A stretch of DNA of 64,000 bases from IMGVR_UViG_3300045973_000169:62001-126000, one strand, 5' to 3'; counted from the first letter of the stretch, positions 5,803-50,074 are shown. Program-made: numbers and translations. The notes: a model not told the origin generated them from the letters alone.

Positions 5803-5894
5803 TAAATGGCAACAGATAGTTTTGATGAATTATTTAAATAGTATGATAAACATTGTCGTTATTAACATATAGCTCAAATATTAAGGAGACCTAT

Positions 5895-6626
5895 ATGGCG
5901 TATACTACAAATACATGGATTAATAAAGCTAAAGAAATTCATAATGATAAATACGATTATTCATTAGTTAATTATTCTGGGAATAAAAATAAAGTTATCA
6001 TTATTTGTAAATTACATGGCGAGTTTTTACAAATACCAAATGATCATACGCAAGGGAGAGGATGTCGTTATTGTGGGAGTGAGTCAAAAGGGAACTATAA
6101 AAAGTTGACTATTGAAGAATTTATTCTACGGTCTAATGTAAAACATAATAATAAATATGATTATAGTAAGTCTAGTTATAATGATGGATATAAGACAAAA
6201 ATATGTATAATTTGTCCTGATCATGGAGAATTCTTTTCAACTGGGAATAATCATTTAAATGGGAGTGGTTGTCCAATTTGTAATGAGTCCAAAGGTGAAA
6301 ACATAATACGTGAATGGCTTATTTCTAATAATATAGAATTTAGAATGTCATATAGATTTAAAGACTGTAAATCAAAACAACCTTTACCTTTTGACTTCTA
6401 TCTTCCAAATTTAAATATTTGCATTGAATATGATGGTGAACAACATTTTAAGGCTACATGGCCTAGAAATGATAAGGATATTGCTACGAAAAATCTTATA
6501 ATGTTACAAGGTAGAGATAAAATTAAAGATTTATATTGTATTAATAATAAAATAAAACTAATAAGGATCCCTTATAATAAATTCAAAAATATTGGACTTA
6601 TTTTAGAGGATAAAATAAAAGGATAA
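5895..6626 (+). CDS. free-standing homing endonuclease, Zn-ribbon repeats + PD-(D/E)xK domain
   Basis: Repeated KYDYS...IC..HGEF...H..G.GC..C modules, PFDFYLP..CIEYDGEQHF; SD ggag before ATG 5895. Confidence 0.85.
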   Translation: MAYTTNTWINKAKEIHNDKYDYSLVNYSGNKNKVIIICKLHGEFLQIPNDHTQGRGCRYCGSESKGNYKKLTIEEFILRSNVKHNNKYDYSKSSYNDGYKTKICIICPDHGEFFSTGNNHLNGSGCPICNESKGENIIREWLISNNIEFRMSYRFKDCKSKQPLPFDFYLPNLNICIEYDGEQHFKATWPRNDKDIATKNLIMLQGRDKIKDLYCINNKIKLIRIPYNKFKNIGLILEDKIKG

Positions 6627-6628
6627 AT

Positions 6629-7756
6629 ATGGATTTATCAGAAATGTTTAAGTATGGAAAAGTTAAATGTGCTCCTACTATGAATACTGAACAGAGGTTT
6701 TCTACTAATGTTCATATAGTTGGATGTGGAGGGACTGGAAGTAGACTAATCCCTTTAGTTGCTCAAGCAATAGCTATACATAACCAGATAATTGCAACTC
6801 AGCCTAATCATAAGGAATATCTTAAAGGACCTATTAATTTAGTCCTCTATGATTGTGATGAAGGCGTTGAGTTGAAGAATCTTGAAAGACAAGGATTCAT
6901 TCCTAGTGATATTGGGAAAAGAAAAGAAGTAGTATTGGCTGAAAGATATGGTGCATGTTTTGGCATTGATATAACTTATGTATCTGATAAGATTAAGTAC
7001 GAGAATACTGTCTTCTCTGGAGCCAATAATATATTCTGTGATTGTACTGACAATCTAAGTGCTAGAAGAGCTATTGAGGATATCTATTATAGGTATTATT
7101 CTAATTGTGTTCTTATTTCTGGTGGTAATGGTGAAGACTTTGGTCAAGCAATGGTCTCATTTAAGTCTAATAATACTAACTTAAATATGAAAACAAAGCA
7201 TTTTACTGATGAAATATTCAGACTGAAATCTTTAATTGATCATCCAGATGTTAAGACTAATAAGACTATTAATATTCTTCCTACTCTATTAGAGCTATAT
7301 CCTGAATTTAAAGATACTGAAGGTCCTAGTTGTGATGAGGTTTTATTAAGGAATGAACAATCTATGCCTATTAATAACCTTGTAGCTACTCTTATGTATA
7401 ATATCTTTTATAGTGCTATCAATGGAGATCCATTTACTTATAATATGGTTAAATGTAATCTTAGTAATACATTTGATACTAAGAAGATAACACATCCTAA
7501 AGCTATGTTTGAACTTTTAGTAAGTGGGGTTACTGGCAGTAAGAATGGATATGCTGCTATTGAAGAATGGCGTAAATTGAATATTGCTCGTACTGGACAT
7601 TTTGTTCTTGTTGCTGATGTAGTTAAGTTTTTAGAACAGTATAAAAAGAAAGCACTTAATATTGTTAATGGATATATACTTGATAACTGGAAGTTAACAC
7701 CAGCAGATCATATAGTTCTTAACAATGCTATTAAGACTGTTAAGGAGGAGGATTAA
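6629..7756 (+). CDS. ThiF/E1-like activating enzyme (PRTRC ThiF-like)
   Basis: VGCGGTGS, D..VELKNLERQ, G..K..VLAERY, DCTDN..AR, PSC candidate catalytic Cys. Confidence 0.9.
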   Translation: MDLSEMFKYGKVKCAPTMNTEQRFSTNVHIVGCGGTGSRLIPLVAQAIAIHNQIIATQPNHKEYLKGPINLVLYDCDEGVELKNLERQGFIPSDIGKRKEVVLAERYGACFGIDITYVSDKIKYENTVFSGANNIFCDCTDNLSARRAIEDIYYRYYSNCVLISGGNGEDFGQAMVSFKSNNTNLNMKTKHFTDEIFRLKSLIDHPDVKTNKTINILPTLLELYPEFKDTEGPSCDEVLLRNEQSMPINNLVATLMYNIFYSAINGDPFTYNMVKCNLSNTFDTKKITHPKAMFELLVSGVTGSKNGYAAIEEWRKLNIARTGHFVLVADVVKFLEQYKKKALNIVNGYILDNWKLTPADHIVLNNAIKTVKEED

Positions 7757-7757
7757 T

Positions 7758-14356: not shown

Positions 14357-14433
14357 TGGCAACTTACTTTACAGCAGATTTACAAAAGAGTTATTAACAT
14401 TGGTAGTTAGTTAATGTCCAAGGAGTAACTCTA

Positions 14434-14988
14434 ATGATAAATAATGCTGGTAAAAATAATCCAAATTATAAACATGGATTACATTGTGAAATAAATTATT
14501 GTGTTTGTGGTAAAGAGAAAGATTATAGATCTGAATTATGTAAATTCTGCTCTGGCAAAGAATTACAAATTACTAAAGAACAAATTTTGGAATATCTTAG
14601 TAAATCTAAATCATTGCTTGAGCTTTCTAAATATCTTAATATTTCTAGACAATCTGTAACTAGATATATCAAAAAATATGATCTTGATATTTCGCATTTT
14701 AGCCCTGGACGAAATAGACCATATAGACTTGATCAGATATTTTGTATATCAGATACAAGAATAAATGGAACTGTTAAAAAATTTCTTATTGAGAATAAAA
14801 TATTAGAATATATTTGCTCTGAATGTAAATGTAAACCAATATGGAATAATATACTATTAGTTCTTGAATTAGATCATATAAACGGAAATAGTTTAGACAA
14901 TAGAATTGAAAATTTAAGATTCTTATGTCCTAATTGTCATTCACAAACAGATACCAACAAAGGTAAAAATTCTAAAAAGAAAGAATAA
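14434..14988 (+). CDS. HNH homing endonuclease
   Basis: LELDHINGNSLDNRIENLRFLCPNCHSQT; NNPNYKHG. Confidence 0.92.
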   Translation: MINNAGKNNPNYKHGLHCEINYCVCGKEKDYRSELCKFCSGKELQITKEQILEYLSKSKSLLELSKYLNISRQSVTRYIKKYDLDISHFSPGRNRPYRLDQIFCISDTRINGTVKKFLIENKILEYICSECKCKPIWNNILLVLELDHINGNSLDNRIENLRFLCPNCHSQTDTNKGKNSKKKE

Positions 14989-17191: not shown

Positions 17192-18430
17192 ATGGCTAGT
17201 GGTAAAATTGCTGCTCGTCAGGCAGCAGAAGCTGAACGAAATGAAAAGTTGAAAGCAATATTACAAAATGAAACAAGAAAAATTGAAGAAGCTAAAGCCG
17301 CTAAAGGCCCAAAGAAGAAAGATGGATTTGCTTTATTAAATAGACTTTCACATAAAGCTATGGGTAAAGCAATTAGAAGTATTGCTACATATAAGCCAAA
17401 GTCTTATAATCCTGATAAACAATTAATTGATTTTATTAAACATTTATTCGTGAAGTATCCTGTTCCATATTTTATGTTTCAATGTATGGTTGAACAAGGT
17501 CCTATCAAATATGGAGAACCTGCAACTCATCGTAGAGGAGATGTTTACTTTGGTAGAGGACAGAATTATAAACCTGATGAATTTCTTTATTTACATGATA
17601 TTTATAGAGATTGGTTTTTCTGTATTGCTCAAGGTGGATCTTTTCAGAAATTAACTAAGAGTGTCTTTACGAAGAAAGAAGCTGTGTTATTTTTGAAAGC
17701 TCCATTTAATGAGAAAGAAATCCATATAAATATCTGGTGGGCTAAAATGAAAGCTCTTGATATCCCTAATTATATGATTCCTAGTCTTATTGATAAACTA
17801 TTTAGGAATAGACATATCTTTAGTGATGATGGACGGTTTATGGAAATATTACATTTCTTTGCTAATCATCATGCTGAAATAGAGAAACAAGAGTTTGATG
17901 AGATTACTGATTTTATTGATTGGAAGCTTAGACATGAGCCAGAGTTCCGTTATAAAGGCAGAACTGTCTCTTCTATGATTAAGCTTTCAAATGAATGGCA
18001 TGCTGCTCTTCAAAAAGCTAAACTTGGAAGTAATGTATCTTGGGCTGGATTTATGCATGAAATTTGGAAGCATGATGAAAAAGATTTTACTTGTGAAGTT
18101 GTTGAGCTTACATCTAATAAGCTTCTTTATAGTGAAGGAAGGAAACAAAAGCATTGTGTTTACTCTTATGTAGATAGATGTGCTAATGGACATTGTTCTA
18201 TTTTTTCATTTCGTGTTTATAAGAAATTCCTTCAAGGTGTTGATGCAGATAATAAACCTATATGGGATAAAGGTGAAGAGATTAAGAGACTTACTATTGA
18301 AGTCAATATTAAAGATAGAAATATTGTTCAAGTTAGAGGATCATTAAACAGGTCTGCAGAGTCTGATGAAAAGAGAATACTTAATCTTTGGGCAGGAGCT
18401 AAAGGTTTTAGTTTTAGTAGATGGTTCTAA
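17192..18430 (+). CDS. PcfJ-domain protein
   Basis: EL.S...L..EG..QKHCVYSY...C..G.CSIFS, TIEV, IVQVRG..N; SD aggagg. Confidence 0.85.
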   Translation: MASGKIAARQAAEAERNEKLKAILQNETRKIEEAKAAKGPKKKDGFALLNRLSHKAMGKAIRSIATYKPKSYNPDKQLIDFIKHLFVKYPVPYFMFQCMVEQGPIKYGEPATHRRGDVYFGRGQNYKPDEFLYLHDIYRDWFFCIAQGGSFQKLTKSVFTKKEAVLFLKAPFNEKEIHINIWWAKMKALDIPNYMIPSLIDKLFRNRHIFSDDGRFMEILHFFANHHAEIEKQEFDEITDFIDWKLRHEPEFRYKGRTVSSMIKLSNEWHAALQKAKLGSNVSWAGFMHEIWKHDEKDFTCEVVELTSNKLLYSEGRKQKHCVYSYVDRCANGHCSIFSFRVYKKFLQGVDADNKPIWDKGEEIKRLTIEVNIKDRNIVQVRGSLNRSAESDEKRILNLWAGAKGFSFSRWF

Positions 18431-18431
18431 T

Positions 18432-18863
18432 ATGAAAGAGTTTCATTTTAAAAGTAAAGGTAGAATAGAGTATAATCCTGCTAGAGGGAATCTTAAGAAG
18501 AAACCTGATTGGTGGGCTATATTACATTGTAGTGAAGAGATAACTCGATATTATAGATATTGGGTCTATAAGAGATATCATATTCCTTTAAGTAAACCAT
18601 CATGGGGCTCTCATATTTCGATTATAAGAGGTGAGAAACCTTATGATGATCAGATGCATTTCTGGAAGAAGTATGATGGCTTAGAGGTTGAATTTGAGTA
18701 CTCTCATAACGTAAGACAGAGTGGTGATACTACTGGTTGGGATAGACCTGATAGTTATTGGTTTGTGGATGTTAAATGTGATTTTCTTATTGATATAAGG
18801 AAAGAGCTTAATTTAAAATATGATTATGGTTTACATATGACTATAGGGAGAACTTGGTTATGA
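18432..18863 (+). CDS. 2H phosphoesterase-like protein
   Basis: Two HxS/T motifs: HISIIRGE and HMTIG. Confidence 0.7.
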   Translation: MKEFHFKSKGRIEYNPARGNLKKKPDWWAILHCSEEITRYYRYWVYKRYHIPLSKPSWGSHISIIRGEKPYDDQMHFWKKYDGLEVEFEYSHNVRQSGDTTGWDRPDSYWFVDVKCDFLIDIRKELNLKYDYGLHMTIGRTWL

Positions 18864-19159
18864 AATGTCCTTATGGATATCACTTTGCTGTGGACTGGGG
18901 AATGTTTCCTGAGTGTGATAGCGTATGCCCTAATCCAGAGTACCATTACTGTAAGACTGTTAGAAGTGAATGTACTCATAAAGCTGATTTTGGATCAGAG
19001 ATTATAGCAAATAGAGAAGCTAGGCTTCTATCAAATGAAAAAAGAAATTTTAATGGCTATCAGTGCAGTTACTGTGGTGGGTGGCATATAGGTCGTGGTT
19101 AAAAGTTTTTCTAAGCGGAACTGAGTTATTAACATATGTGCTAATGGAGGGCATATGTT

Positions 19160-19759
19160 ATGATAGGAATATATTTTATAAAGAATAAAATAAATAATAA
19201 AATGTATATAGGGCTTAGTACTAATATAGAAAATCGTTTTTTATTTCATAAACGAAGACTTTTAAGTAATACTCATAAAAATTCTCATTTTCAGTCATCT
19301 TTTAATGAAAATGGAATTGAAAATTTTGAATTTGGAATATTAGAAGAATGCATTGAAGTTATTCTATCTGAACGTGAGAAATATTGGATTTCTTTTTATA
19401 GGAGCCACAATCGAGAGTTTGGATATAATAAAACTTTTGGTGGGGAGTTTGGTAAAATGTCTGATGAAATCAATGAAAGAAGAAGGCAAAAACTTAAATT
19501 GCAAACTATTCCACAAGAAATGCGTGATAGAATCAGTAAAACATTAACTGGCAGAAAACAACCTAAAGAAGTAGTTGATAATAGGGCAAAGTCTTGTAGA
19601 AAATGTAATGATGAAATTGAGCAAAAAATAATAGATTTATATATTAATAAAAAATTAAATACTAAACAAATTTCTGAATTGTTGAATATAAAAAGAACAA
19701 CAGTTATTAGTATAGTTAAAAGGAATAAAAATGCTAGCAGCCCTAATGGGAACGTGTAA
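19160..19759 (+). CDS. GIY-YIG homing endonuclease
   Basis: GIYFIKN...YIGLS..R...E..W...GYN; C-terminal HTH. Confidence 0.92.
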   Translation: MIGIYFIKNKINNKMYIGLSTNIENRFLFHKRRLLSNTHKNSHFQSSFNENGIENFEFGILEECIEVILSEREKYWISFYRSHNREFGYNKTFGGEFGKMSDEINERRRQKLKLQTIPQEMRDRISKTLTGRKQPKEVVDNRAKSCRKCNDEIEQKIIDLYINKKLNTKQISELLNIKRTTVISIVKRNKNASSPNGNV

Positions 19760-20144
19760 TGGTAGTCTTTGGAGAGATGAATTAATCCCCCAATTAGAAG
19801 TTGATTATTTTAATCCTGTGGTTGCAGATTGGACTCCAGAATGTCAAGATGTTGAGCTTCAAAAAAGAGAAGAAGCGGATTTTGTTATCTATGTTATTAC
19901 TCCTAAAATGAAAGGCTTCTACTCTATTGCAGAAGCTGTTCATGATAGCTGTGATCAACCTTGGAAAACTATCTTTTGCTTCTTAATTGAAGACGAAGGT
20001 GAAACTTTTGATAAACATCAGATTAAATCTTTGGAAGCAACTGCTGCTCTTATATTAAGAAACGGTGGATTTATTGCTAAAGATCTTGCTGAAATTGCTT
20101 TTTGTGTTAATGCGGTAGCTAAAGCCTATGTCCAAAACAGTTAA
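19731..20144 (+). CDS. nucleoside 2-deoxyribosyltransferase-like protein
   Basis: GTCNGSLWRDELI...YFNPVV.DW...E.....D...YVITP.M.G.YSIAE. Confidence 0.75.
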   Translation: MLAALMGTCNGSLWRDELIPQLEVDYFNPVVADWTPECQDVELQKREEADFVIYVITPKMKGFYSIAEAVHDSCDQPWKTIFCFLIEDEGETFDKHQIKSLEATAALILRNGGFIAKDLAEIAFCVNAVAKAYVQNS

Positions 20145-20228
20145 GCTAATAATGATCACACCAGAGAACAAACTATATTAACTATGTAGTTATTAACAGT
20201 TACCATAATTAATAATTGGAGAACTGTT

Positions 20229-20999
20229 ATGCAAGATAGAGAATATATAATTTATTGTTTTTTAGATGAGAATAATAAACCTTATTATGTTGGACAAACT
20301 TATAATCTTAAGATGAGATTAAATGCCCATAATCAATTTATTTTAGATATTGAAGAAAAAAGATTACCATCTAAATACCCATATTATCGTAAGGCTAGAG
20401 ATTTATTTAAAAATGGTATAGGATTAAAAGTAAATATATTAGAAAATAATCTTACCAAAAAAGAAGCAGACTTAAAAGAGTCTGAATATATTAGTAAGTT
20501 TAGAAATGATATTTCCTGTAAGTTATTAAATATTTTAGCTGGTGGTGAATTTAATCAAAGAAATAAATTTGTGTCTGATGAAACAAAAAAGAAAATAAGT
20601 GAATCTAAAAAAGGGAAAAAACTTACAGAAAAACATAAAGAGTCTTTAAGAAATTGTGATAGGAAACAAAGGAACTGGACAGAAGAAGATAAAATTAAAT
20701 ATGCTAAAATGGCAAAAATAAATTTATTGAATAAACAAACTCCAGAGAGTATTGAAAAGATGCGTCAGTCTAAAGTTGGGCAAAAACATTCTGAAGAAAC
20801 TAAAAGTAAAATAGCAAGATTTGGGAAAGATCATAAAAGAGCAAAGCACTATTTGATTATTGCCCCAGATGGGACTAATTACGATATTCATGGACTTTCT
20901 TCTTTTTGTAAAGAATTTGATTTAAACCAAAGTGGACTATGGCATGCTCTTAATAAAGGAAATGGTAAATATAAGGGATGGCAAATTCAAGAACTGTAA
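20229..20999 (+). CDS. GIY-YIG homing endonuclease with NUMOD3 repeats
   Basis: IIYCF...YYVGQT..R...E...LLN; SDETKKKIS / HSEETKSKI repeats. Confidence 0.9.
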   Translation: MQDREYIIYCFLDENNKPYYVGQTYNLKMRLNAHNQFILDIEEKRLPSKYPYYRKARDLFKNGIGLKVNILENNLTKKEADLKESEYISKFRNDISCKLLNILAGGEFNQRNKFVSDETKKKISESKKGKKLTEKHKESLRNCDRKQRNWTEEDKIKYAKMAKINLLNKQTPESIEKMRQSKVGQKHSEETKSKIARFGKDHKRAKHYLIIAPDGTNYDIHGLSSFCKEFDLNQSGLWHALNKGNGKYKGWQIQEL

Positions 21000-22168: not shown

Positions 22169-22286
22169 TAAATGGCAATTAAAACTAAATCTATAAATAT
22201 AATTGAAGTACAAGATTGGGATGCTTTAGTTGAAGAGACTTATGGTAAGCCATACTCATTTCAACAACAAGATGATTGTAAACCTC

Positions 22287-22494: not shown

Positions 22495-23517
22495 AATGAA
22501 GAAATTAAGTATTGATGTAGTAGCAATAGTTGCAAATTATCTGATCTTAGTGTATGGTTCAACTACTACATTAGATGTTAAAGACAATCTTAGAAACCTA
22601 GGATTTAAAGCTAATCAGGAAGAAGTCAGTTCTTTCCTAGCTGAATATCAGGAAGCTTTTGAAGCTCAGAACTTTGTATTTGAAAGTGATGAGAAAGACT
22701 TTACTCTTGTCTATGAAGTAATTGCTCAAGGACGTAAGTCTTTTAGACGTTATTCTTTTGAAGAAGTAGTTGAAGATGTAGTTGATGGAACAGATCTTGA
22801 TCCTAAAACTTATATTGCAGCTCATATGAATGATAATTCTGCTGATCTTGCAACTAAGCTTGGTATCTCTAAAGGTTCAGTTATTGCTTATAAAAGCAAC
22901 ATTACAATGGGCCGTTAATAACAATTAAAAATCCTAGAAATAGGTTGGTGCAGAAAGATTGGTAGTCAAAATGACTCCGAGATGGAAAGCAAAAGAAGTA
23001 AGGAAACTTGCAAAGAATAAACAATATAACTATACATATTCATGTTTTCACTGGTTTGAAACTGAAGACAATAGAAAATTTGTTTATGCTAAAAGTGGTG
23101 AATGGAATAAAGATACTAAATTTTATATTGTTAAAAGGACAAATGAGCCTAATGATGTAGACTTTAAGTATTGGATTTATCCTATTCCACAAGAGCAAGC
23201 AATTAATAACAAATATAGAGAACCATGCATTAATTGGTTTGGTGGTCCTCGATATGTTATTGTTGAATTAAATACTAGATAATTAAAACCATTCCAAACC
23301 AGAAAGCGAACTGGGACAGTGTGGGCACGAAATAGGAAACTATGGATACTTAGGATCGGGAAACAAAGCTATACGGGAGTTCAATGGTCTCCTAGCAATC
23401 TAGTATTAAAATGCTACACACGCATACTATTCTAGGTAGTGAATTGTGTTAGTTATAGTTTAGAATAAACTAAAATTGGTTGAGGAATCTAGAATACAAT
23501 TAAAAGGGAGATCACAA

Positions 23518-23742: not shown

Positions 23743-23866
23743 TAAAACTTATAGCTTAGTTTCCTAGATAAACTAAGTTGTAATATTAAGAAACATAGGT
23801 TAATAAGTATTATAGTTATTAACATTTATAAAGGGTCAAACATACCCTAAACTAAAGGAATATATT

Positions 23867-23974: not shown

Positions 23975-23980
23975 TATAAA

Positions 23981-24036: not shown

Positions 24037-24062
24037 CGTTGCTGTTTCGGCAACATTTATTT

Positions 24063-24229: not shown

Positions 24230-24235
24230 CTTTAC

Positions 24236-24318: not shown

Positions 24319-24328
24319 ATAATATTAA

Positions 24329-24402: not shown

Positions 24403-24480
24403 CATTGCCTTTTGACCCAATCATAGGGTTTAGACCAAAGTAGTTATTAACAATTAGAAATAAATTCTAGGAGTTATATT

Positions 24481-25269: not shown

Positions 25270-25602
25270 ATGGAAAAGGCTTGTAAACATCATGGATTAA
25301 CTAAGTTTAGTCTACAAAAGTCAAATGGCAGAGAAACTTATTATTGTGTTAAATGTTATATGGAAAGACAGAATCGTACAAGGAATAATAAGAAAGAACA
25401 AGCTTTAACCTATAAAGGTGGTAAATGTTCAATCTGTGGGTATGATAAATGCAGTGCTGCTTTAGATTTCCATCATCTTAATCCTCTAGAAAAAGAAAGT
25501 AAAAATGATTTAAGAAATCTATCATGGGATAGATTAAAGATTGAACTTGATAAATGCATTCTTGTATGTGCTAATTGTCATAGAGAAATACATTTTAAAT
25601 AA
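25270..25602 (+). CDS. HNH endonuclease
   Basis: GGKCSICGY...ALDFHH..P..K...LVCANCHREIH. Confidence 0.9.
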   Translation: MEKACKHHGLTKFSLQKSNGRETYYCVKCYMERQNRTRNNKKEQALTYKGGKCSICGYDKCSAALDFHHLNPLEKESKNDLRNLSWDRLKIELDKCILVCANCHREIHFK

Positions 25603-25607
25603 GATAT

Positions 25608-26558: not shown

Positions 26559-26596
26559 CGTTATTAACACTTAGGTATAATCTAAGGAGTTAATAT

Positions 26597-28413: not shown

Positions 28414-28451
28414 ATGGTTATTAACATGTATCCCTAAATCAAGAGGTACAT

Positions 28452-29495: not shown

Positions 29496-30128
29496 TAATA
29501 TCCTCTTTTGTAGTCCCTCTTGTTTTAAAACCCACCTCTTAGTAGTACCCCTTTATTAACACAACCTCTCTTGCAGTACACTAAAAATTTAGTAGGTAAT
29601 ATGTATATAAAATTAATTTTAAATAAAGAAGATTTAACTGGAACTTGTAAAGACTATCCTATAGACCAAATAACCTGTTCAAGTTTCAAATCCAGAGTAT
29701 GCTTAAAGATATTAGAAGCTAACTATGTAGTATATCTCCCTGGAGATTTTGACGGAGATGAAGTTAAGATACTTAAGGATAGACCATGATAGCATATAAA
29801 TTGTTCCGTCAACTTAAAAACGGTGAGATAGCTCCATTATTTATAAATAAAAAACTTAGACTTTCTCAGAATGTATGGTATAATGCTGAATCTCATCGTA
29901 CTAAAGGATTTGCTTTTAGACCAGGATTCCATGTAACATCTAAACCAGTAGCTCCTCATCTATCTGAAAAGGATAGAGTATGGAAACAAGTAGAAATAGA
30001 AGATTATGTAGAAATTAAACGTCCAGATTCACAAGGTGGATTATGGATGCTTGCACAACGTATGAAAGTACTAGACTCCACAATCTAACTATGGTTATTA
30101 ACAGATAGAGCAATGGGGGCTCTGTCTT

Positions 30129-40149: not shown

Positions 40150-40422
40150 ATGATAGGGATTTTAGCAACTATACTAACAATTGGATCTATATTACCCCAA
40201 ATAAAAAAGACATGGGAATCAAAATCAGTTGATGATTTATCTCTATGGCAAATGGTAATCCTTACAATAGGAATATTGTTTTGGTTACTATATGGTATTC
40301 AGATTCATGATACTGTTGTTATAGTTGCTAACTCTATTAGCTTATTGCTTCAGTTATTTATGATTGGAATGAAACAAATATATGGAAGTAAGGAATACAA
40401 ATGTCTAAAACACTTAAGATGA
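40150..40422 (+). CDS. SemiSWEET / PQ-loop small transporter
   Basis: LPQIKK..SKSV.DLS, WLLYG, VIVAN; 3 TM. Confidence 0.85.
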   Translation: MIGILATILTIGSILPQIKKTWESKSVDDLSLWQMVILTIGILFWLLYGIQIHDTVVIVANSISLLLQLFMIGMKQIYGSKEYKCLKHLR

Positions 40423-40492
40423 TTAACCTATACGACTCGGTATGCAATAACAAGTTAATAACATATATCTGAATTAAGTTGAGGTAAATGTT

Positions 40493-41032
40493 ATGAAAAT
40501 TTGTGGGAAATGTAAAGAAGAGAAAGATAGTTGTGAGTTTGCTAGTAATGTGTCAGCCAAAGATAAGCTTTCTAATTGGTGTAAAAAATGCATAAAAGAT
40601 AATGTGAAAAGAATTAAATTAGAAAAAGAAAAAGGGATTTATATACCAAAGGTTAGAAAGCCAAGACTAACAGAAGAAGATAGAATTAAAAGAAATGAAG
40701 AATTAAAAAGATATCATAGTAACTATAGATTAGATAATTTTGAACGTATACAAAAAGTTAAAAAAGAATATAGAGATAATATAAAAATAGAAGGAATTAT
40801 TGCTTATGGCGGGAAATGTTCTTGCTGTGGAGAGTCTGCCTATGAATTTTTAACTATTGAACATTTAAAAGGAAGAGACCCAAACGAGAAGAGACTCACT
40901 GGAAAGAAAATGTGGGCTAAGGCAAAAGCTGAAAATTACCCTGATAAATATACTGTTCTTTGTTTTAATTGTAATTGTGCTAAAGGAGCATTTGGAATAT
41001 GTCCACACCAGAATATAGTAACAAAAAATTAA
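40493..41032 (+). CDS. HNH-type homing endonuclease
   Basis: YGGKCSCCGE...LTIEH...LCFNCNCAKG. Confidence 0.85.
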   Translation: MKICGKCKEEKDSCEFASNVSAKDKLSNWCKKCIKDNVKRIKLEKEKGIYIPKVRKPRLTEEDRIKRNEELKRYHSNYRLDNFERIQKVKKEYRDNIKIEGIIAYGGKCSCCGESAYEFLTIEHLKGRDPNEKRLTGKKMWAKAKAENYPDKYTVLCFNCNCAKGAFGICPHQNIVTKN

Positions 41033-41932: not shown

Positions 41933-42721
41933 ATGAAAGTTAAGTTAATTCATGCTACTCCATTAGATATCTTAGTTCAGGCTATCCGTAAATGCTATGA
42001 TAGTGGAAGTAAAAGTGATTCTGGATACTTTGAAAAGAATGAACAACTATTAGTTAATGAGAAGTATAAGTATAGATTAGGCGAGAAAGATGAAGCTCTC
42101 ATTAAGAGAGTAATTGAAGCTGGACATACATCTACTCTTGAACATATTAATTTTACATTTGACCTAGGTGGATACAGCAGAGCTTTATTGCAAGAGAAAT
42201 CACGTCATCGTCATGCTGCTGTAAGTGAACGTTCAACTAGATATTGTTTAAAGAAGCTCAAGGATATTAAGTCTTTAGTTACTGTACAAAGATTTCCATC
42301 TGGACAAGAAATCTTTATGTGTAATAAGCAAGAAGCTGCAAAGTATCTTGTTCTTACTGGAGATGAGGATGTAGACAATCTTTCTATTGAGGCTCTTGAT
42401 AGACTAAGACAATTGCTTGTTCGTAAACCTGAGCTTCGTAATGATGTAGCTAAATATCCTATTCCTGATTCATTGAGAACAGAATGTATCTTTACTATTA
42501 ATGCTAGGAGTCTAAGGAATTTATTTAGTCTTAGGATCAGTAAACAGGCTTTATGGGAATTCCAAAAGTTATGTTGCTATATGTATGAATCAATCCCTTT
42601 CCCATATAAATTTCTAGTTGATGATTTAGTTAATAAAGAGATATATGAATTCTGGATGGGTAGTGACAAACCAGCAGATGGTGGTCATGCTAACTTGTTT
42701 GAGAGGTATTATAGAGTATGA
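41933..42721 (+). CDS. thyX: flavin-dependent thymidylate synthase
   Basis: GHTSTLEH, SRALLQE.SRHR...SERSTRY, NARSLRN..SLR....A.WE. Confidence 0.93.
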   Translation: MKVKLIHATPLDILVQAIRKCYDSGSKSDSGYFEKNEQLLVNEKYKYRLGEKDEALIKRVIEAGHTSTLEHINFTFDLGGYSRALLQEKSRHRHAAVSERSTRYCLKKLKDIKSLVTVQRFPSGQEIFMCNKQEAAKYLVLTGDEDVDNLSIEALDRLRQLLVRKPELRNDVAKYPIPDSLRTECIFTINARSLRNLFSLRISKQALWEFQKLCCYMYESIPFPYKFLVDDLVNKEIYEFWMGSDKPADGGHANLFERYYRV

Positions 42722-43890
42722 GTACTTGTGTCCCGCTTCATGTTCATTCTGAAGGTTCAGTAAGAGATAGCATTAATAAAATATCAAATTATGTACAAAA
42801 ATGTGTTGAACTAAAATATACTGCTGCTAGTATTTCAGATCATGGATTCATGGGATATAATTATAAGTTCTATAAAGAATGTAAAAAGTATAATATAAAA
42901 CCTATTCTTGGACAAGAATTCTATTATACCCATGATAGAGCTGATAAGGGGTTAAATTATCATTTAGTCTTATACGCCATGAATGAGAAAGGGTATCAGA
43001 ACCTATGTAAATTAAGTTCTGACGCGTTTATTAATGGATTCTATAGGAAGGCTAGGACAGATAAAACAATCCTTGCAGAGTACTCTGAAGGCTTAATTTG
43101 CACTCCTGCTTGCTGCTTTGGTATGGCACAACAATATATTGTAAATGGTGAGATGGATAATGCAATCCAAGAAGTAAAAGATTTACAATCTATCTTTAAA
43201 GAGAATTTCTATCTTGAGATTCATGATCATGGGATTGAAGATGAAATTAAAATTAAGGATGAGTTTCGTAATATAGGGAATGACTTAAATATTAAAGTAG
43301 TCCCTGGAATTGATGTCCATTATACTAATAAAGAAGATCAGAAGATTCATGGTATCTTTAAGAATATTGCTTATGCTTCTGGAGGAGAAAAGGATAGTTC
43401 CTTTAATGGGACTGATTTCCATGTTCTATCTCCTGAAGAGATGGCAGTTAAATTTACTAAAGAAGAATTAGATAATACTCTTGAAATAGCAGATAAGTGT
43501 AATGTAGATTTTAAATTTACTGGTTACTTCTTACCTACATATGATATTCCTGAAAAAGAGTTTGATACATATGAATATCTTAGAACTATATGCTTCAGAG
43601 AACTTAAAAAGAAAGGTTTAGATTCTAACCCTCTATATGTAGAGAGATTAGAGTTTGAACTTAATATGCTCCATCTGGCTGACTTAGAGAACTATCTTCT
43701 TATAGTGTCTGACTATTGTAATTGGGCTAAGAATAATGATGTCCCTGTTGGACCTGGACGAGGATCTATGGGTGGTTCTATTGTAAGTTGGTTAACCAAT
43801 ATTACAGGAGTTGATCCTTTGAAATATGACTTACTTTTTGCAAGAGCTATCAACCCAGGTAGAAGTTTACAATTTGATTTTGGAGTCTAA
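42718..43890 (+). CDS. dnaE: DNA polymerase III alpha, N-terminal piece (PHP + start of palm)
   Basis: LHVHS..S..D, SDHG, KPILGQE, HL, DVHY, GPGRGS, ITGVDPLKYDLLFARAINPGR, then stop. Confidence 0.9.
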   Translation: MSTCVPLHVHSEGSVRDSINKISNYVQKCVELKYTAASISDHGFMGYNYKFYKECKKYNIKPILGQEFYYTHDRADKGLNYHLVLYAMNEKGYQNLCKLSSDAFINGFYRKARTDKTILAEYSEGLICTPACCFGMAQQYIVNGEMDNAIQEVKDLQSIFKENFYLEIHDHGIEDEIKIKDEFRNIGNDLNIKVVPGIDVHYTNKEDQKIHGIFKNIAYASGGEKDSSFNGTDFHVLSPEEMAVKFTKEELDNTLEIADKCNVDFKFTGYFLPTYDIPEKEFDTYEYLRTICFRELKKKGLDSNPLYVERLEFELNMLHLADLENYLLIVSDYCNWAKNNDVPVGPGRGSMGGSIVSWLTNITGVDPLKYDLLFARAINPGRSLQFDFGV

Positions 43891-45538: not shown

Positions 45539-47893
45539 GTGATTAAATACCATATAGATAGACCTATAGTTGAATATGTACAAGCTAATGAACGTTTTTT
45601 AGAATTAGATGATAATGAACATATTACACTATATAATGAAATTAAAAATGCTGTTCTTCAAGGAATAGACGATAAAATATTAAGTAAAGTATTTGATGAA
45701 GCTCCCTATATGAATGATAGCAGTATTAATTCCTATCTATTATGGGTACTCCATTTGACAAAAGATAAGCCTACTGGATTACAGAAGATTAAATCTCCTG
45801 GATCTTATTGTGATATCGACTTAGACTTCTCTCAAGAGAAGAGAGAAAAAGTATTTGATTATCTTGCTGAGAAATATGGCTCTACTAGAGTAAGTCATAT
45901 TGCTACATTTGGAACTATGGGAGCCAAGGCTGCTATCAGAAACTCTGCTAGGGCCTTGAGCTACCCAACTGAACTCCAGAATAAAGTAGCTAAATTTATA
46001 TCAGATGAACCTAAAGCAACTATTCAAGGGAGTATTGATGCTTCTAAAGAATTCCAAGATATGATTAAGAAATCTGAACAAGTTCAACATATTATATCTG
46101 TTGCAAAGAAGCTGGAAGGATTACCTAATTCACTTAGTGTCCATGCTTCTGCTGGTATTATATCTGATGTTGCAACTACTGATAGAGTTCCGATGATGGT
46201 ATCTGCTAAGAAGAATGATCCTATCACTGGGATTAGTGGATCTAAAGTTGTTTCTCAATTTGATATGAAAGATGTTGAAAATGCTGGTTTATTAAAATAT
46301 GATATTCTTGGTCTTAAGACTCTTGATATTATAAATGAAACAGTTAAGATAATTAAAAGGAATAAGGATATAGATATCGATATTGAATCGATTGATATGA
46401 ATGATCCTGGAATCTATAAACTTCTTAATGCTGGACATGTAACTATAGTATTCCAATTTGATGGAACTGCTGCTGCATATCTACCTAAGATTAAACCTCA
46501 AAATATAGATGAAATATCAGACTTAACTTCAATACTCCGTCCCGGACCGATGAGCATGGGAATGGTTGAGAGGTATGCTGAAGCTAAATTTGAGAATAAG
46601 AAATATGAATATGAATTGAAAGATCAAGCTCTTATTGCTAAAGTTTGGGAAATATGTTATCGTTCATATGGATTAATGATATACCAAGAACAAACAATTA
46701 AATGTTTTGTTGAGATAGCAGGATTCAATGAAATCGCTGCTGATAATGCTAGAAGAGCTATGGGTAAAAAGTTACCTGAAGAGATGGCTAAATTAGAAGG
46801 AGCGTTTGTTGAAGGTGGAATTAAAAAAGGCTATAACGAGAATGACCTTAAGACTTTATTTAAAGGGATCGCTGGATTTGCAGAATATGGGTTTAATGCA
46901 TCGCATGCAGTATGTTATTCTTTTATTACTTGTCAAACTGCTTGGTTATCCCATTATTATCCGTTAGAGTTCTTTACTGCTGCTATGACTATTGATGCAG
47001 GGAATACTGATGATATTAGACGTTATATCAAATCAGCTAAAGAAAGAAATATAATTCTTTCACCTCCTGATATTAATAAATCTGATAGTATGTTTACTAT
47101 TAAAGACGAATCTATTGTTTTTGGACTTAATGCTATTAAAGGTGTTGGTCCATCTACATCGAAAAAGATTATGGCTCGTAGACCTAAAAAAGGATATACT
47201 TCTCTTGGTCATTTTATTAGGCGTAATCTCGATTTGATTAATTCAAAGATACTTGAATCATATACGAAAGCTGGATGTTTTAAATCATTTGGTTATAATA
47301 AGCAATCTGTTTTAAATAGTATCCAGAATATATTGGATTTTATTAGTGTCTTGAAAGAGTATGATAAGTACAATACTTTCTTTGATCTTTGTAACATCTC
47401 ACTTGACAATTTTATAGATTCATGTATAATGAAAGATTCCCAAAAAGAAGACACATTATCTTATGAGATTGATTCTTTAGGTCTTTATATTAGTAAACAT
47501 CCTATGGATGTATATGATCTTAAAGGAATGAATGATCCTTCTTTTGTAGAATATTATGAGAATGAAGATGAATTTATCACTATAGGGTGTCTATCTGGAA
47601 TAGAAGTTAGAAAGACTAAAGCCAAACTAAATATGTGTAAGTTTAATATTGCATCTAGCATGTATAATCTTCCATGTATTATATTTCCTAAAGCATATTC
47701 TAAATATGTTAATGACCCTACTATCGCTGAAGGTAGAATGGTATGTGTCCAAGGAAGAATAAAAATTTCTGATACTGGTAGAGAATTAATTGTGAATGAT
47801 ATTCATGATAATATCGATAGGTATCTTGTTAGAAAAGTAATTAATAAAAATGAGTTTCCAATAAACTCCAAATTAACATTTATATTAGGATAA
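45539..47893 (+). CDS. dnaE: DNA polymerase III alpha, C-terminal piece (palm/fingers/HhH/OB)
   Basis: CDIDLDF, HAS.G, KYDILGL.TL, RPGP, IYQEQ, RRAMGKK, YGFNASHA, PDIN.S, GL..IKGVG, OB fold. Confidence 0.92.
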   Translation: MIKYHIDRPIVEYVQANERFLELDDNEHITLYNEIKNAVLQGIDDKILSKVFDEAPYMNDSSINSYLLWVLHLTKDKPTGLQKIKSPGSYCDIDLDFSQEKREKVFDYLAEKYGSTRVSHIATFGTMGAKAAIRNSARALSYPTELQNKVAKFISDEPKATIQGSIDASKEFQDMIKKSEQVQHIISVAKKLEGLPNSLSVHASAGIISDVATTDRVPMMVSAKKNDPITGISGSKVVSQFDMKDVENAGLLKYDILGLKTLDIINETVKIIKRNKDIDIDIESIDMNDPGIYKLLNAGHVTIVFQFDGTAAAYLPKIKPQNIDEISDLTSILRPGPMSMGMVERYAEAKFENKKYEYELKDQALIAKVWEICYRSYGLMIYQEQTIKCFVEIAGFNEIAADNARRAMGKKLPEEMAKLEGAFVEGGIKKGYNENDLKTLFKGIAGFAEYGFNASHAVCYSFITCQTAWLSHYYPLEFFTAAMTIDAGNTDDIRRYIKSAKERNIILSPPDINKSDSMFTIKDESIVFGLNAIKGVGPSTSKKIMARRPKKGYTSLGHFIRRNLDLINSKILESYTKAGCFKSFGYNKQSVLNSIQNILDFISVLKEYDKYNTFFDLCNISLDNFIDSCIMKDSQKEDTLSYEIDSLGLYISKHPMDVYDLKGMNDPSFVEYYENEDEFITIGCLSGIEVRKTKAKLNMCKFNIASSMYNLPCIIFPKAYSKYVNDPTIAEGRMVCVQGRIKISDTGRELIVNDIHDNIDRYLVRKVINKNEFPINSKLTFILG

Positions 47894-48123
47894 ACAATGT
47901 CATATAATCTTGCACGTAGAGTATTAAGAGCAGAAAAGAAAGAATTTGTAACATCTTGGAAAAAGAAAAATAAAGTTAGTGATCAAAGCATAGCTAAATA
48001 TATCTCGAATAAAAATAAGAAAATGAGTCTTGAAAATCAATATGAAGCGATTCTTGAGATTACATTTAATGCCTTGCAGAAGCAGGCAGAAGCAGCTAAA
48101 ACTCCTAGTGAAGAGGTAATTTA

Positions 48124-49242
48124 ATGGCTCCAAAAAAAGAGAAAGCAACTGTAAAAACATCTGGATTAACTTACGAAGAAGCAGTCAAGGTTGTTAAAGC
48201 AGCAAAAGGGTCACAAAGTATTATTGGATCTGAAATCCCTGAGTATTGTTCTGTTAGGAAAATTAGGACTGGTATCCCAACCCTAGATTATGAATTAGGT
48301 GGTGGTATCAGTGAAGGTCGTATTACTATTATGGGTGGTAAACCTAGTTCTGCTAAGACTACCACTACCCTACAAGGTCCGGTTTCAGCTCTTATTAATG
48401 AGATCAAAGCTAGTGGCGAAACAAAATTTGGACTTATTGTAGATTCAGAAGGCGGATATGATTCTCCTTATGCTAGAGCATTAGGTGTAGATGAAAAGTA
48501 TCTTATTATTAAACGTAAGAAAGTTATTGAAGATGCATTCCAAGAGATAGATGATCTGATTTCTATGGGACTTATTAAGTTTCTTGTTATAGATTCATTG
48601 GATACAATGGTTTCGAAGAAAGGTGATGATAATAAGTATGCTGCTACAATGGGTGGTACTGCTGGAGCTTTGGCTCAACATCTCCCTGTTTTATATGAAA
48701 AGATTATGGAATGGAATGTTACAACAATTATTATTAAACAAGCTCGTGTTAAGATTGGTGGTTTTAATCCAACTGGGAATGAGATAATTCAACTATCTGG
48801 TGGTTATGCACTAAAGCATCTAGCTGATAGTATTTTCATTGTAAACAGATTATCTAACAAGAATCTATCTTATACTCCTATCCAATTAAAAGCAGTTAAG
48901 ACTAGAAGCTCTAGACTTGGACTTATTATGGATATGCCTTTAGGCTCATGTGGGATTGATGTTGTTCATGATGCTATTGCTCTTGCTATTGGACATGGAT
49001 TGATTACTACGGGTGGCGGTGGTTGGACTCAGTTAGATGATGACCAAGGAAAGATCCTAGTCAGAGAACAAGGACTTGATAAATTTGTTGCTAAGATTAA
49101 AGATAGTGCTACATTAACCCAATCACTTATAGATAGTGTTTATCTTAATATTATTGATACTGCACTTGTTGGTAGGAATACTACTGAAGGTGGAGATCTT
49201 ATTTCCGATATTGAAAATGAGAAAGAAAAAGTAGAAGAATAA
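48124..49242 (+). CDS. recA: RecA/UvsX-like recombinase
   Basis: TG...LD..LGGG...GR, Walker A GKPSSAKTT, DSE, VIDS, Q.R..IG, SGG.AL.H. Confidence 0.85.
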   Translation: MAPKKEKATVKTSGLTYEEAVKVVKAAKGSQSIIGSEIPEYCSVRKIRTGIPTLDYELGGGISEGRITIMGGKPSSAKTTTTLQGPVSALINEIKASGETKFGLIVDSEGGYDSPYARALGVDEKYLIIKRKKVIEDAFQEIDDLISMGLIKFLVIDSLDTMVSKKGDDNKYAATMGGTAGALAQHLPVLYEKIMEWNVTTIIIKQARVKIGGFNPTGNEIIQLSGGYALKHLADSIFIVNRLSNKNLSYTPIQLKAVKTRSSRLGLIMDMPLGSCGIDVVHDAIALAIGHGLITTGGGGWTQLDDDQGKILVREQGLDKFVAKIKDSATLTQSLIDSVYLNIIDTALVGRNTTEGGDLISDIENEKEKVEE

Positions 49243-49321
49243 TGGCTATCGCAAAGCAATATGCAACACGTAATAAAAATTAGTTATTAACATATGTAAT
49301 TAACTATTTATGGAGTTACAT

Positions 49322-50074
49322 ATGAAACAAAAAATTAATTTATTAAATATAAGATTTGGCAGACTCCTGGTAATACAGGAGTCTGAAAAAACATCTTATA
49401 ATAGAACACAATGGCTTTGTAAGTGTGATTGTGGGAATGAAGTTAAAGTTGCTACAACAAGCTTACAATCGGGAGCTACTGTATCATGTGGTTGCTTTAG
49501 GATAGAGCAATGCAGTAAAAAACTTTCATTAGATTTAATTGGTAAAAAATTTGGGAAATTACTTGTTTTGGAAAGAAAAGGATCTCAAAAACTTAATGGA
49601 GAAAATTATAAATATGCAAGGTCAGTATGGCTTTGTTTGTGTGATTGTGGGAAAACTTATGAAGTTACAGGGCAATTACTTATATTAAATAAAGTTTGTT
49701 CATGTGGCTGTGCTTCAGTTATAAGTGGCGAAAAACATCATAATTGGAATCCAAATAAAACGGATGAAGAAAGGTTACAACATCGAGATACCAAAGAGTA
49801 TTTTAAATGGCGTAAATCTATATTCAATAAATTTAATTGGACATGCCAATGTTGTAAAGTTAAGAGACATTTAGGACTAAATGCACATCATATCCAAAAT
49901 TACTCAAATCATAAAGAATTAAGATTTAATATTGATAATGGTTTACTATTATGTAGATATTGTCATAGAAAATTTCATAAAGAATATGGTAGAAAAAATA
50001 ATAATATTTCTCAATTAAAGGAATTTTTACAAAATAATGAAAAAGAAACAGTACTGCACAAGGATGCTTCTTAA
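49322..50074 (+). CDS. HNH homing endonuclease
   Basis: FG.L.V...W.C.CDCG repeats, HHNW, AHHI...NG..LC..CH..FH. Confidence 0.9.
   Translation: MKQKINLLNIRFGRLLVIQESEKTSYNRTQWLCKCDCGNEVKVATTSLQSGATVSCGCFRIEQCSKKLSLDLIGKKFGKLLVLERKGSQKLNGENYKYARSVWLCLCDCGKTYEVTGQLLILNKVCSCGCASVISGEKHHNWNPNKTDEERLQHRDTKEYFKWRKSIFNKFNWTCQCCKVKRHLGLNAHHIQNYSNHKELRFNIDNGLLLCRYCHRKFHKEYGRKNNNISQLKEFLQNNEKETVLHKDAS

What the first reader, a model, noticed from the sequence alone, without database searches (positions are those of the whole stretch)
5858..49324. Shared GTTATTAACA element plus RBS-occluding hairpins in front of 10 endonuclease genes
Seen: the near-palindromic 10-mer lies 25-34 nt before each start, and the leader folds over the SD/start region. 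Examples: catatag/ctatatg (5866-5897), taacatatgt/gcatatgtta (19130-19160), taacagtt/aactgtta (20194-20229), acatgtatc/ggtacatgt (28424-28453), agatagagc/gctctgtct (30103-27), catatgtaatt/agttacatatg (49291-49324). Known: T4-type homing endonucleases (e.g. I-TevI) are silenced on early read-through transcripts by an RBS hairpin and are expressed from a late promoter that starts inside the hairpin. Inference: GTTATTAACA is this phage's late promoter, possibly read by the sigma-like protein at 57154-58008, and unrelated nucleases have converged on it.
Basis: partly seen in the sequence, partly recalled or inferred. Interest (0 to 1): 0.6.

Follow-up and report, generated by a model that had tools for sequence, protein, structure and literature searches.

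The report
Shared promoter-like motif before phage endonuclease genes
An uncultivated 207-kb pond phage puts the same 10-base promoter-like signal, usually with an RNA hairpin that hides the ribosome binding site, in front of nearly all its selfish homing-endonuclease genes; the same signal precedes virion genes, so this looks like the known phage T4 trick rebuilt with a different promoter.

Summary
GTTATTAACA occurs 10 times in the window, all on the + strand, against 0.26 expected. Nine copies lie 25-34 nt before endonuclease genes. The tenth precedes a 35-aa ORF with no nuclease similarity.

Genome-wide (206,638 bp) there are 28 copies of the palindromic core GTTA-W-TAAC. Every one has an A as its 10th base on the strand of the downstream gene. 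Fifteen of 18 endonuclease genes carry the motif.

Leaders of the endonuclease genes are much more folded than other leaders. The 5' arm starts inside the motif and the 3' arm covers the ribosome binding site and start codon.

The motif, mostly as GTTAATAACA, precedes virion genes without hairpins. In one case it follows an intrinsic terminator that the scan called, and in another a G+C-rich hairpin that the scan did not call. It is kept at orthologous virion-gene sites in five related phages, once at the cost of an Asn-to-Ile change.

A relative lacking one endonuclease gene shows that the motif lies at the 5' edge of the inserted cassette.

No RNA data exist, so promoter activity, late timing and the link to the sigma-like protein remain inferred. 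This is a new member of a known kind of regulation.

The parts
5858..5867 (+). GTTATTAACA copy before the phrog_559-type nuclease gene 5895-6626. Hairpin spans 5866-5897.
   Evidence: MFE -7.2, z -1.95
14390..14399 (+). GTTATTAACA copy before the HNH gene 14434-14988. Hairpin spans about 14398-14436.
   Evidence: MFE -9.5, z -1.5
19125..19134 (+). GTTATTAACA copy before the GIY-YIG gene 19160-19759. Hairpin spans 19130-19160.
   Evidence: MFE -13.2, z -4.1
20189..20198 (+). GTTATTAACA copy before the GIY-YIG/NUMOD3 gene 20229-20999. Hairpin spans 20194-20229.
   Evidence: MFE -10.1, z -3.05
22914..22923 (+). A-form GTTAATAACA, 35 nt before an unannotated 107-aa ORF (22959-23282). Not a nuclease.
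23815..23824 (+). GTTATTAACA copy before a 35-aa ORF (23867-23974) upstream of the tRNA cluster. No nuclease similarity, and the ribosome binding site is not occluded.
24443..24452 (+). GTTATTAACA copy before the HNH gene 24481-25077. Weak hairpin spans 24448-24476.
   Evidence: MFE -5.1, z -1.35
26560..26569 (+). GTTATTAACA copy before the HNH (phrog_2255) gene 26597-27115. Hairpin spans 26562-26595.
   Evidence: MFE -10.6, z -3.9
28417..28426 (+). GTTATTAACA copy before the HNH gene 28452-28895 (GTG start). Hairpin spans 28424-28453.
   Evidence: MFE -11.4, z -3.2
30094..30103 (+). GTTATTAACA copy before the phrog_559-type nuclease gene 30129-30893. Hairpin spans 30103-30127.
   Evidence: MFE -12.4, z -3.3
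40454..40463 (+). A-form GTTAATAACA before the HNH/EndoVII-like gene 40493-41032. Hairpin spans 40458-40494.
   Evidence: MFE -10.8, z -3.9
49283..49292 (+). GTTATTAACA copy before the HNH gene 49322-50074. Hairpin spans 49291-49324. The whole cassette, about 49268-50066, is absent from relative G001.
   Evidence: MFE -9.5, z -2.6
25270..25602 (+). Truncated HNH gene (110 aa) without an intact motif; only GTTATTTTAG lies upstream.
57154..58008 (+). 284-aa sigma-factor-like protein with sigma2-like and sigma4-like domains. It is the candidate reader of the motif, but the link is untested.
   Evidence: No Pfam or PHROG hit.

Best explanation
GTTAWTAACA is a single-element promoter of this phage clade, comparable to a -10 element, that drives virion-module genes and so is presumably late. 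It has no conserved -35 partner.

Free-standing and insertion-borne homing-endonuclease cassettes carry this element at their extreme 5' edge. The cassette order is promoter, short leader, ribosome binding site, nuclease ORF, and often a re-coded replacement 5' end for the gene they invaded.

In the window's genome the leader usually forms a hairpin. Its 5' arm begins inside the motif; the terminal CA plus the next base often pairs with the AUG. Its 3' arm covers the ribosome binding site and the start codon. Read-through transcripts from the surrounding replication and nucleotide-metabolism operons contain the whole hairpin and should be translationally silent. Transcripts that start a few bases downstream of the motif lack the 5' arm and should be translatable.

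What is shown: the motif statistics, its strand rule, the hairpin statistics, the cassette boundary, and the conservation before virion genes.

What is inferred: promoter activity, the start-site position, late timing, and recognition by the sigma-like protein at 57154-58008.
For: 1. Enrichment and direction. The genome has 19 T-form and 10 A-form 10-mers, against about 1.35 and 1.6 expected. All 28 palindromic cores have an A at position 10 on the strand of the downstream gene, and only one has it on both strands. Of the 29 10-mers, 22 have a same-strand start codon within 45 nt, against 2 of 58 for TATAAATA.

2. It is the most enriched intergenic word apart from the Shine-Dalgarno sequence. 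No conserved upstream element accompanies it.

3. Virion genes in the minus-strand structural module carry it: an 813-aa tail protein, a 243-aa virion protein, a 318-aa Ig-like protein, a 93-aa protein, and a site upstream of the 394-aa gene that precedes the major head protein gene. The strongest predicted terminator of that region ends 14 nt before the motif at genome 200745.

4. Conservation. In five relatives (major head protein 68-89% identical), the 10-mer is kept at orthologous sites while the flanks diverge. After the head gene it follows terminator hairpins of unrelated sequence. Inside a coding region the T/A switch turns Asn into Ile while the motif is preserved.

5. Hairpins. For the 15 endonuclease leaders the mean z is -2.2 and Stouffer z is -8.6. 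Against 229 other genes the median MFE is -10.3 versus -3.7 (p = 1e-5), and ribosome-binding-site pairing is 0.61 versus 0.40 (p = 2.5e-5). Leaders of virion genes with the motif are unstructured (z +0.36). Pairing of the ribosome-binding-site and start region falls from 0.74 to 0.44-0.45 when the RNA 5' end is placed 5-7 nt past the motif.

6. Cassette edge. Relative G001 lacks the endonuclease gene at 49322-50074, and the motif starts 0-3 nt from the 5' junction. Other junctions lie 19-26 nt upstream of the motif.

7. At least seven nuclease sequence families share it, including HNH types, GIY-YIG, a treble-clef type, and LAGLIDADG in G001.

8. The published T4 paradigm has the same architecture (PMC2988022; PMC2677866).
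Against: - No transcript data exist. The only run holding this DNA is the source pond metagenome.
- No canonical sigma region 2, T7-type RNA polymerase or Rpb2 domain was found in the genome. The sigma-like assignment rests on language-model features and on modest structural scores (Foldseek E >= 0.019, VIA Z up to 9.3), which are common for helical proteins.
- The core is a perfect palindrome, which is more typical of a dimeric regulator site than of a -10 element.
- In relative G001 the motif-fronted endonuclease leaders are not significantly folded (mean z -0.28), and 2-3 of the 15 own leaders lack a hairpin.
- The major head protein gene has no motif directly upstream. The nearest copy is about 1.4 kb upstream, lying 203 nt before the preceding 394-aa gene.
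- Some relatives lack the motif where it was examined: L044 after its head gene, and L036 across 21 kb.
- A few copies lie inside genes or before nothing recognisable (genome 60544 and 145177, window 23815).
Confidence: 0.65

Rival explanations
1. The palindrome is an operator for a dimeric phage DNA-binding regulator, either a repressor that silences nuclease and some virion genes or an activator. It would not be the core promoter element, and the true promoter would be elsewhere or host-type.
For: - The core GTTA-W-TAAC is a perfect 9-bp palindrome.
- I-TevI-type autorepression at an operator overlapping a late promoter is known (PMC2988022).
Against: - The strict one-sided 10th base (28 of 28) and the gene-strand orientation are not expected for a symmetric operator.
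- No second conserved element lies nearby.
- The cassette junction lies 0-26 nt upstream of the motif, leaving no room for a separate cassette-borne promoter.
- The placement directly after a terminator calls for re-initiation.
- Sigma-70-type consensus sites are not enriched: 82 found against 80.5 expected.
Confidence: 0.13
2. The element acts in RNA. It would be a cleavage or binding site for an endoribonuclease or translational regulator that removes or masks the 5' arm of the hairpin on polycistronic transcripts.
For: - The strand specificity fits an RNA-level signal.
- The motif forms part of the stem in 12 of 13 hairpins.
- T4 has RNA-level controls of this general kind (PMC3014915, listed but not read).
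Against: - Virion-gene copies have no hairpin.
- One virion-gene copy sits just downstream of a called intrinsic terminator, and another after a G+C-rich hairpin that the scan did not call; little RNA should cross these.
- The palindromic symmetry points to recognition of double-stranded DNA.
- The fixed 22-38 nt distance to start codons suits a promoter with a short 5' UTR.
Confidence: 0.1
3. The motif is a mobility signal: a cassette end, a recombination site or a shared homing target. It would not be an expression signal.
For: It lies at or within 26 nt of the 5' insertion junction in four of the five cassettes compared with G001.
Against: - It precedes conserved, non-mobile virion genes at orthologous sites in five relatives.
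- Nucleases of three unrelated catalytic superfamilies cannot be expected to share one target.
- There is no matching copy at the 3' ends of the cassettes.
Confidence: 0.03
4. The copies are leftovers of duplicated leader DNA, or chance matches in an AT-rich genome, with no function.
For: - Some nuclease genes are paralogues.
- One or two copies are expected by chance.
Against: - Leaders outside the 10-mer are not alignable.
- The nuclease families are unrelated.
- Enrichment is 10- to 40-fold.
- The 10-mer is conserved across phages whose flanking sequence has diverged.
Confidence: 0.01

Closest known systems
Phage T4 / Aeh1 control of I-TevI, I-TevII, I-TevIII, segB and mobE by a late promoter plus a hairpin that sequesters the ribosome binding site (reviewed in PMC2988022)
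   Same: - The nuclease ORF is co-oriented inside earlier transcription units.
- A hairpin covers the ribosome binding site and the start codon.
- A short promoter element without a -35 partner, also used by virion genes, lies in the 5' arm, so promoter-initiated RNA cannot form the hairpin.
- Several nuclease genes sit in the tRNA cluster, as segB does in T4.
   Different: - The promoter word is GTTAWTAACA, not TATAAATA, which is not promoter-associated here.
- The phage is unrelated: Pol III alpha replicase, no close relative among known phages.
- The candidate factor has sigma2-like and sigma4-like domains.
- About 83% of the nuclease genes use the device, whereas seven T4 free-standing endonuclease genes are described as promoter-less cassettes.
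- Nothing has been tested experimentally.
Metagenomic 'fractured genes' loci (Dassa et al. 2009, PMC2677866)
   Same: - Free-standing nuclease genes are inserted in replication and nucleotide-metabolism genes.
- Hairpins lie upstream of the start codon in 15 of 16 cases, and many contain a late-promoter word.
- The nuclease 3' end overlaps the restart of the downstream gene, as seen here at 20978, 40999 and 50037.
   Different: - Those loci use the T4-type TATAAATA element.
- They are flanked by split inteins. No intein halves were looked for or seen here.
T4 late promoters read by gp55/gp33, and SPO1 gp28/gp33-34 phage sigma cascades (from general knowledge)
   Same: A phage-encoded, highly divergent sigma-like factor is encoded among replication genes, and a short phage-specific promoter word precedes virion genes.
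   Different: No sequence similarity to gp55 or to the SPO1 factors was tested or found. The motif is palindromic. Timing is unknown.

Membership tests
T4-type late-promoter / ribosome-binding-site hairpin control of homing endonuclease genes | The nuclease ORF lies in the same orientation inside a transcription unit of earlier genes, so read-through transcripts exist. | tested here: met
   All window nuclease genes are on the + strand between replication, nucleotide-metabolism and tRNA genes, with 20-60 nt gaps upstream. Read-through itself is inferred.
T4-type late-promoter / ribosome-binding-site hairpin control of homing endonuclease genes | A stable RNA hairpin sequesters the Shine-Dalgarno sequence and/or the start codon. 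| tested here: met
   12-13 of 15 leaders fold this way. Stouffer z is -8.6. Mann-Whitney p = 1e-5 against 229 other genes. Not met in relative G001 (z -0.28).
T4-type late-promoter / ribosome-binding-site hairpin control of homing endonuclease genes | A promoter is placed in or at the 5' arm, so its transcripts cannot form the hairpin. | tested here: inconclusive
   The position is met: the 5' arm starts at motif positions 1-12, and predicted ribosome-binding-site pairing drops to background for 5' ends 5-7 nt past the motif. Promoter activity and the start site could not be tested, since no RNA run exists.
T4-type late-promoter / ribosome-binding-site hairpin control of homing endonuclease genes | The same promoter type drives late (virion) genes. 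| tested here: met
   The motif lies before tail, virion, Ig-like and head-module genes. It follows terminators and is conserved in five relatives. 'Late' is inferred from gene function.
T4 late promoter (gp55-dependent) | Consensus TATAAATA at -10. | tested here: not met
   TATAAATA occurs 58 times, with only 2 near gene starts. The motif here is GTTAWTAACA.
Sigma-70 family (the ORF at 57154-58008) | Sequence match to the sigma region 2 and region 4 profiles. | tested here: not met
   No Pfam or PHROG hit, even at E <= 5. PF04542 and PF04545 genome scans do not hit this ORF.
Sigma-70 family (the ORF at 57154-58008) | Two-domain sigma2 + sigma4 fold. | tested here: inconclusive
   The AF2 model has pLDDT 78.7. 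The listed Foldseek PDB hits (about 50 shown of 420) are nearly all sigma factors or sigma-containing RNA polymerase complexes, but with E >= 0.019. VIA gives Z 7-9.3. Residues 226-284 superpose on sigma4 domains at 2.0-2.8 A over 56-59 residues, and residues 35-174 on SigW sigma2 at 2.6 A over 90 residues. ESM Atlas feature score is 0.97 to phage sigma clusters.
Homing endonuclease genes (the downstream ORFs) | Nuclease family domains, and presence/absence polymorphism between related genomes. | tested here: met
   HNH, GIY-YIG, LAGLIDADG_3 and phrog_559 hits. The cassettes differ between the window genome and G001 at precise junctions. Cleavage activity was not tested.

The most novel reading that the evidence does not exclude
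The endonuclease genes do not simply borrow the phage's late promoter. They share a portable 5' regulatory module made of the T-centred form GTTATTAACA plus a leader whose first bases pair with the AUG. This module would be exchanged among unrelated nuclease families and be functionally distinct from the A-centred form used by virion genes, for example in strength, timing or a dedicated regulator. That would amount to a clade-wide 'licence plate' through which the phage, or the selfish genes themselves, co-ordinate all nuclease expression.
Probability: 0.2. Interest if true: 0.6.

Novelty: new member of a known kind. Interest (0 to 1): 0.45.

Why it matters
- It gives a testable promoter consensus, and a candidate sigma factor, for an uncultivated clade of roughly 200-kb freshwater phages with no characterised relative.
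- The T4 solution for taming homing endonucleases appears to have arisen again with different parts, and here covers almost every nuclease gene in the genome.
- It defines the minimal mobile cassette precisely: promoter, leader, ORF, and a replacement gene start.
- For annotation, the motif marks late transcription units and cassette boundaries in this clade.

Tried and rejected
- **RNA evidence:** Laying its contigs on 17500-23400 (5,901 letters, within the operators' limit) showed only the source contig and one unreliable 28-nt-sided joint.
- **Close relatives in the annotated phage collection:** none by DNA, and only about 22-28% identity by protein.
- **Searches for related loci:** the Pol III alpha query in viral contigs found nothing. 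The RecA-profile scan found one close relative (G001) and others at about 25% identity that lack the motif. The metagenome scan added nothing.
- **Phage RNA polymerase or canonical sigma:** PF04542, PF00940 and PF00562 were absent. PF04545 gave only a weak hit in a GIY-YIG gene's HTH domain.
- **Group I introns:** none at Rfam gathering score in the window, in the other own-genome loci searched (L001-L004, genome 1-62,500), or in G001. The insertions in G001's polymerase gene therefore remain unclassified.
- **The 35-aa ORF at 23867:** no similarity to any protein of the genome.
- **Upstream -35-like element:** none conserved.
- **Literature search for the 10-mer:** only genome-editing tag oligonucleotides turned up.
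- **Procedural notes:** the costly word-index protein search was used once, for the sigma-like ORF, because the family scans left it open. No alternative genetic code was used.


Full report
**Context.** The window is bases 62,001-126,000 of a single 206,638-bp viral contig with 33.8% G+C. The only sequencing run that holds it is a pond metagenome. It has no close relative in the annotated phage collection. The window encodes a two-part DNA Pol III alpha, RecA, a primase-helicase, ribonucleotide reductase, dUTPase, ClpP and 17 tRNAs. A crude gene call gives 292 genes. These run on the + strand from 13 to 126 kb, and on the - strand from 126 to 206 kb. PHROG hits identify the minus-strand block as the virion module: major head protein, portal, tail proteins and virion structural proteins.

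**The observation.**
- GTTATTAACA occurs exactly 10 times in the window, always on the + strand.
- Second-order Markov simulations give a mean of 0.26 and a maximum of 2.
- Nine copies lie 25-34 nt before ORFs that hit HNH, GIY-YIG or phrog_559 (treble-clef) nuclease families.
- The copy at 23815 precedes only a 35-aa ORF with no nuclease similarity.
- All six quoted hairpins are recovered as minimum-free-energy structures at the quoted coordinates.

**The motif genome-wide.**
- The core GTTA-W-TAAC is a perfect 9-bp palindrome. The genome holds 28 cores.
- In every one, the 10th base read on the strand of the downstream gene is A. Only one core has an A on both sides.
- There are 19 T-centred and 10 A-centred 10-mers, against about 1.35 and 1.6 expected.
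- Of the 29, 22 have a same-strand start codon within 45 nt.
- Apart from the Shine-Dalgarno sequence, it is the most enriched word in intergenic DNA.
- Nothing upstream of it is conserved.
- Local phmmer plus family scans find 18 nuclease-like genes. Fifteen carry the motif. The three without it are a truncated HNH gene, a fragment, and one intact HNH gene.

**Hairpins.**
- For the 15 motif-fronted nuclease leaders, the mean z against dinucleotide shuffles is -2.2 and Stouffer z is -8.6.
- Against 229 other genes with a recognisable Shine-Dalgarno sequence, the median MFE of positions -40 to +6 is -10.3 versus -3.7 kcal/mol (p = 1e-5). Mean pairing probability of the Shine-Dalgarno and start region is 0.61 versus 0.40 (p = 2.5e-5).
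- In 12 of 13 hairpins the 5' arm begins within the motif. Often the motif's terminal CA plus the next T pairs with the AUG.
- Moving the RNA 5' end in silico from upstream of the motif to 5-7 nt past it lowers pairing from 0.74 to 0.44-0.45, which is near background.
- Leaders of non-nuclease genes that carry the motif are unstructured (mean z +0.36).

It is present there.
- Motif copies, mostly GTTAATAACA, precede:
  - an 813-aa tail protein;
  - a 243-aa virion structural protein;
  - a 318-aa protein with weak Ig-like similarity;
  - a 93-aa protein next to the portal gene.
  - One further copy lies 203 nt upstream of the 394-aa gene that precedes the major head protein gene.
- The strongest predicted terminator of that region (11 pairs plus a T-run, after the head gene) ends 14 nt before the motif at genome 200745.
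- A G+C-rich hairpin, which the scan did not call as a terminator, precedes the copy at 193251.

**Relatives.**
- Five viral contigs were found through the major head protein, at 68-89% identity. They keep the 10-mer at orthologous places, and always on the gene strand.
- After the head gene, three of them (L042, L043, L045) have terminator hairpins of unrelated sequence followed by the invariant 10-mer. In a fourth, L044, the terminator is not followed by the motif.
- Inside the 3' coding part of the gene before the 394-aa gene, the 10-mer is invariant in all five phages compared (own genome, L042, L043, L045, L046) while neighbouring codons vary. In one phage the central A-to-T switch changes Asn to Ile. 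The constraint there is therefore on the nucleic acid, not on the protein.
- A contig whose sigma-like protein is 67% identical (L038) keeps the A-form after a large gene that precedes a small one, an arrangement resembling that at own genome 130432; orthology of these genes was not tested.
- A more distant relative (47% identity) shows no copy in 21 kb.

**The motif travels with the cassette.**
- Relative G001 (a 28.9-kb fragment, RecA 81% identical) is syntenic with genome 91.8-112.9 kb and has six exact copies.
- It lacks the nuclease gene at window 49322-50074. The insertion begins 0-3 nt before the motif, cuts off the first 13 codons of the downstream gene, and supplies a re-coded new start from the nuclease gene's 3' end.
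- The same stub-and-restart pattern is seen at 20128/20978 and at 40401/40999.
- G001 has three insertions in its Pol III alpha gene. Each carries a motif-fronted nuclease gene: LAGLIDADG, phrog_559 types, and one antisense. In two, the motif lies 24-26 nt from a junction; in the third, 255 nt.
- G001's leaders, however, fold only weakly (mean z -0.28), so the hairpin is frequent but not obligatory.

**The sigma-like protein.**
- The ORF at 57154-58008 has no Pfam or PHROG hit.
- Its ESM Atlas feature neighbours are phage sigma-factor clusters, with a score of 0.97.
- It has 38 homologues on phage-like contigs of up to 211 kb.
- An AF2 model built from their alignment has pLDDT 78.7.
- The listed Foldseek matches (about 50 shown of 420) are nearly all sigma factors or sigma-containing RNA polymerase complexes, although weak (E >= 0.019).
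- VIA-align gives Z up to 9.3. The C-terminal 59 residues superpose on sigma4 domains at 2.0-2.8 A, and residues 35-174 on a sigma2 domain at 2.6 A.
- I regard 'sigma-like' as probable. Its link to the motif is an untested inference.
- No other RNA polymerase or canonical sigma was detected.

**Mechanism and comparison.**
- The architecture matches the one established for I-TevI/II/III, segB and mobE. It also matches what was noted in metagenomic fractured-gene loci, where a late promoter inside the 5' arm of a hairpin covering the ribosome binding site restricts translation to promoter-initiated late transcripts (PMC2988022; PMC2677866).
- The differences here are:
  - a different promoter word, since TATAAATA is not gene-associated in this genome;
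  - an unrelated phage lineage;
  - a different kind of candidate factor;
  - near-universal use by the genome's nuclease genes.
- A palindromic operator, an RNA-level site and a mobility signal were each considered. They are less likely for the reasons given under the rival explanations.

**Unexplained.**
- Nuclease genes prefer the T-centred form (14 of 15 here, 5 of 5 in G001). Virion genes prefer the A-centred form (8 of 13 non-nuclease sites here). The two forms nevertheless interchange at orthologous sites.
- The internal site about 200 nt upstream of the 394-aa gene implies a long 5' UTR or another role.

**Verdict.** The feature is real and strongly non-random. It is best read as a clade-specific late-type promoter carried by homing-endonuclease cassettes, together with a translational hairpin. 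That makes it a new member of a known regulatory kind. Promoter activity, timing and the reading factor remain to be shown.

Noticed in passing
window 49242-49283 / 50037-50074; 20128-20181 / 20978-20999; 40401-40472 / 40999-41032: Nuclease cassettes sit a few codons inside the next gene. An orphan N-terminal stub ORF ends at the motif. The 3' end of the nuclease gene overlaps a re-coded replacement start of the invaded gene (for example SKTVKLI against SRTVKLI).
   Followed up: partly
window 42718-43890 and 45539-47893; L013/L014 (G001): DNA Pol III alpha is encoded in two ORFs separated by 1.65 kb of small ORFs, in both this genome and G001. G001's C-terminal part is further interrupted by insertions of 1123, 1280 and 953 bp. 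Each holds a motif-fronted nuclease gene, one of them antisense. Rfam finds no group I intron, and 953 is not a multiple of 3, so how the gene stays functional is open.
   Followed up: partly
window 24236-29311: A cluster of 17 tRNA genes is interleaved with five HNH genes (24481, 25270, 26597, 28452, 30129), reminiscent of segB in the T4 tRNA region. Rfam scores the tRNA-Ser(UGA) at 26425 marginally as tRNA-Sec (48.9 bits against a 47-bit cut-off).
   Followed up: no
whole genome; window 22914 and 40454 for the A-form: The central base of the motif correlates with gene class. The T-form goes mostly with nuclease genes and the A-form mostly with virion genes, yet the two forms swap at orthologous sites in relatives.
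   Followed up: partly
window 20978-22168, 6629-7756, 58274-59082: A PARP-catalytic-domain protein with a WGR domain, a ThiF-family protein, and two adjacent dUTPase-like genes.
   Followed up: no
window 23815-24235: A motif copy, a 35-aa ORF and about 260 nt of non-coding sequence lie just upstream of tRNA-Tyr. This may be a late promoter for the tRNA cluster, or the remains of a lost cassette.
   Followed up: partly
L009 3436-3445 (genome 203445) and orthologous sites in L042, L043, L045, L046: A motif copy is conserved inside a coding region, a constant 190-203 nt upstream of the 394-aa gene that precedes the major head protein gene. It is followed by a conserved GACCCCACACT word.
   Followed up: partly
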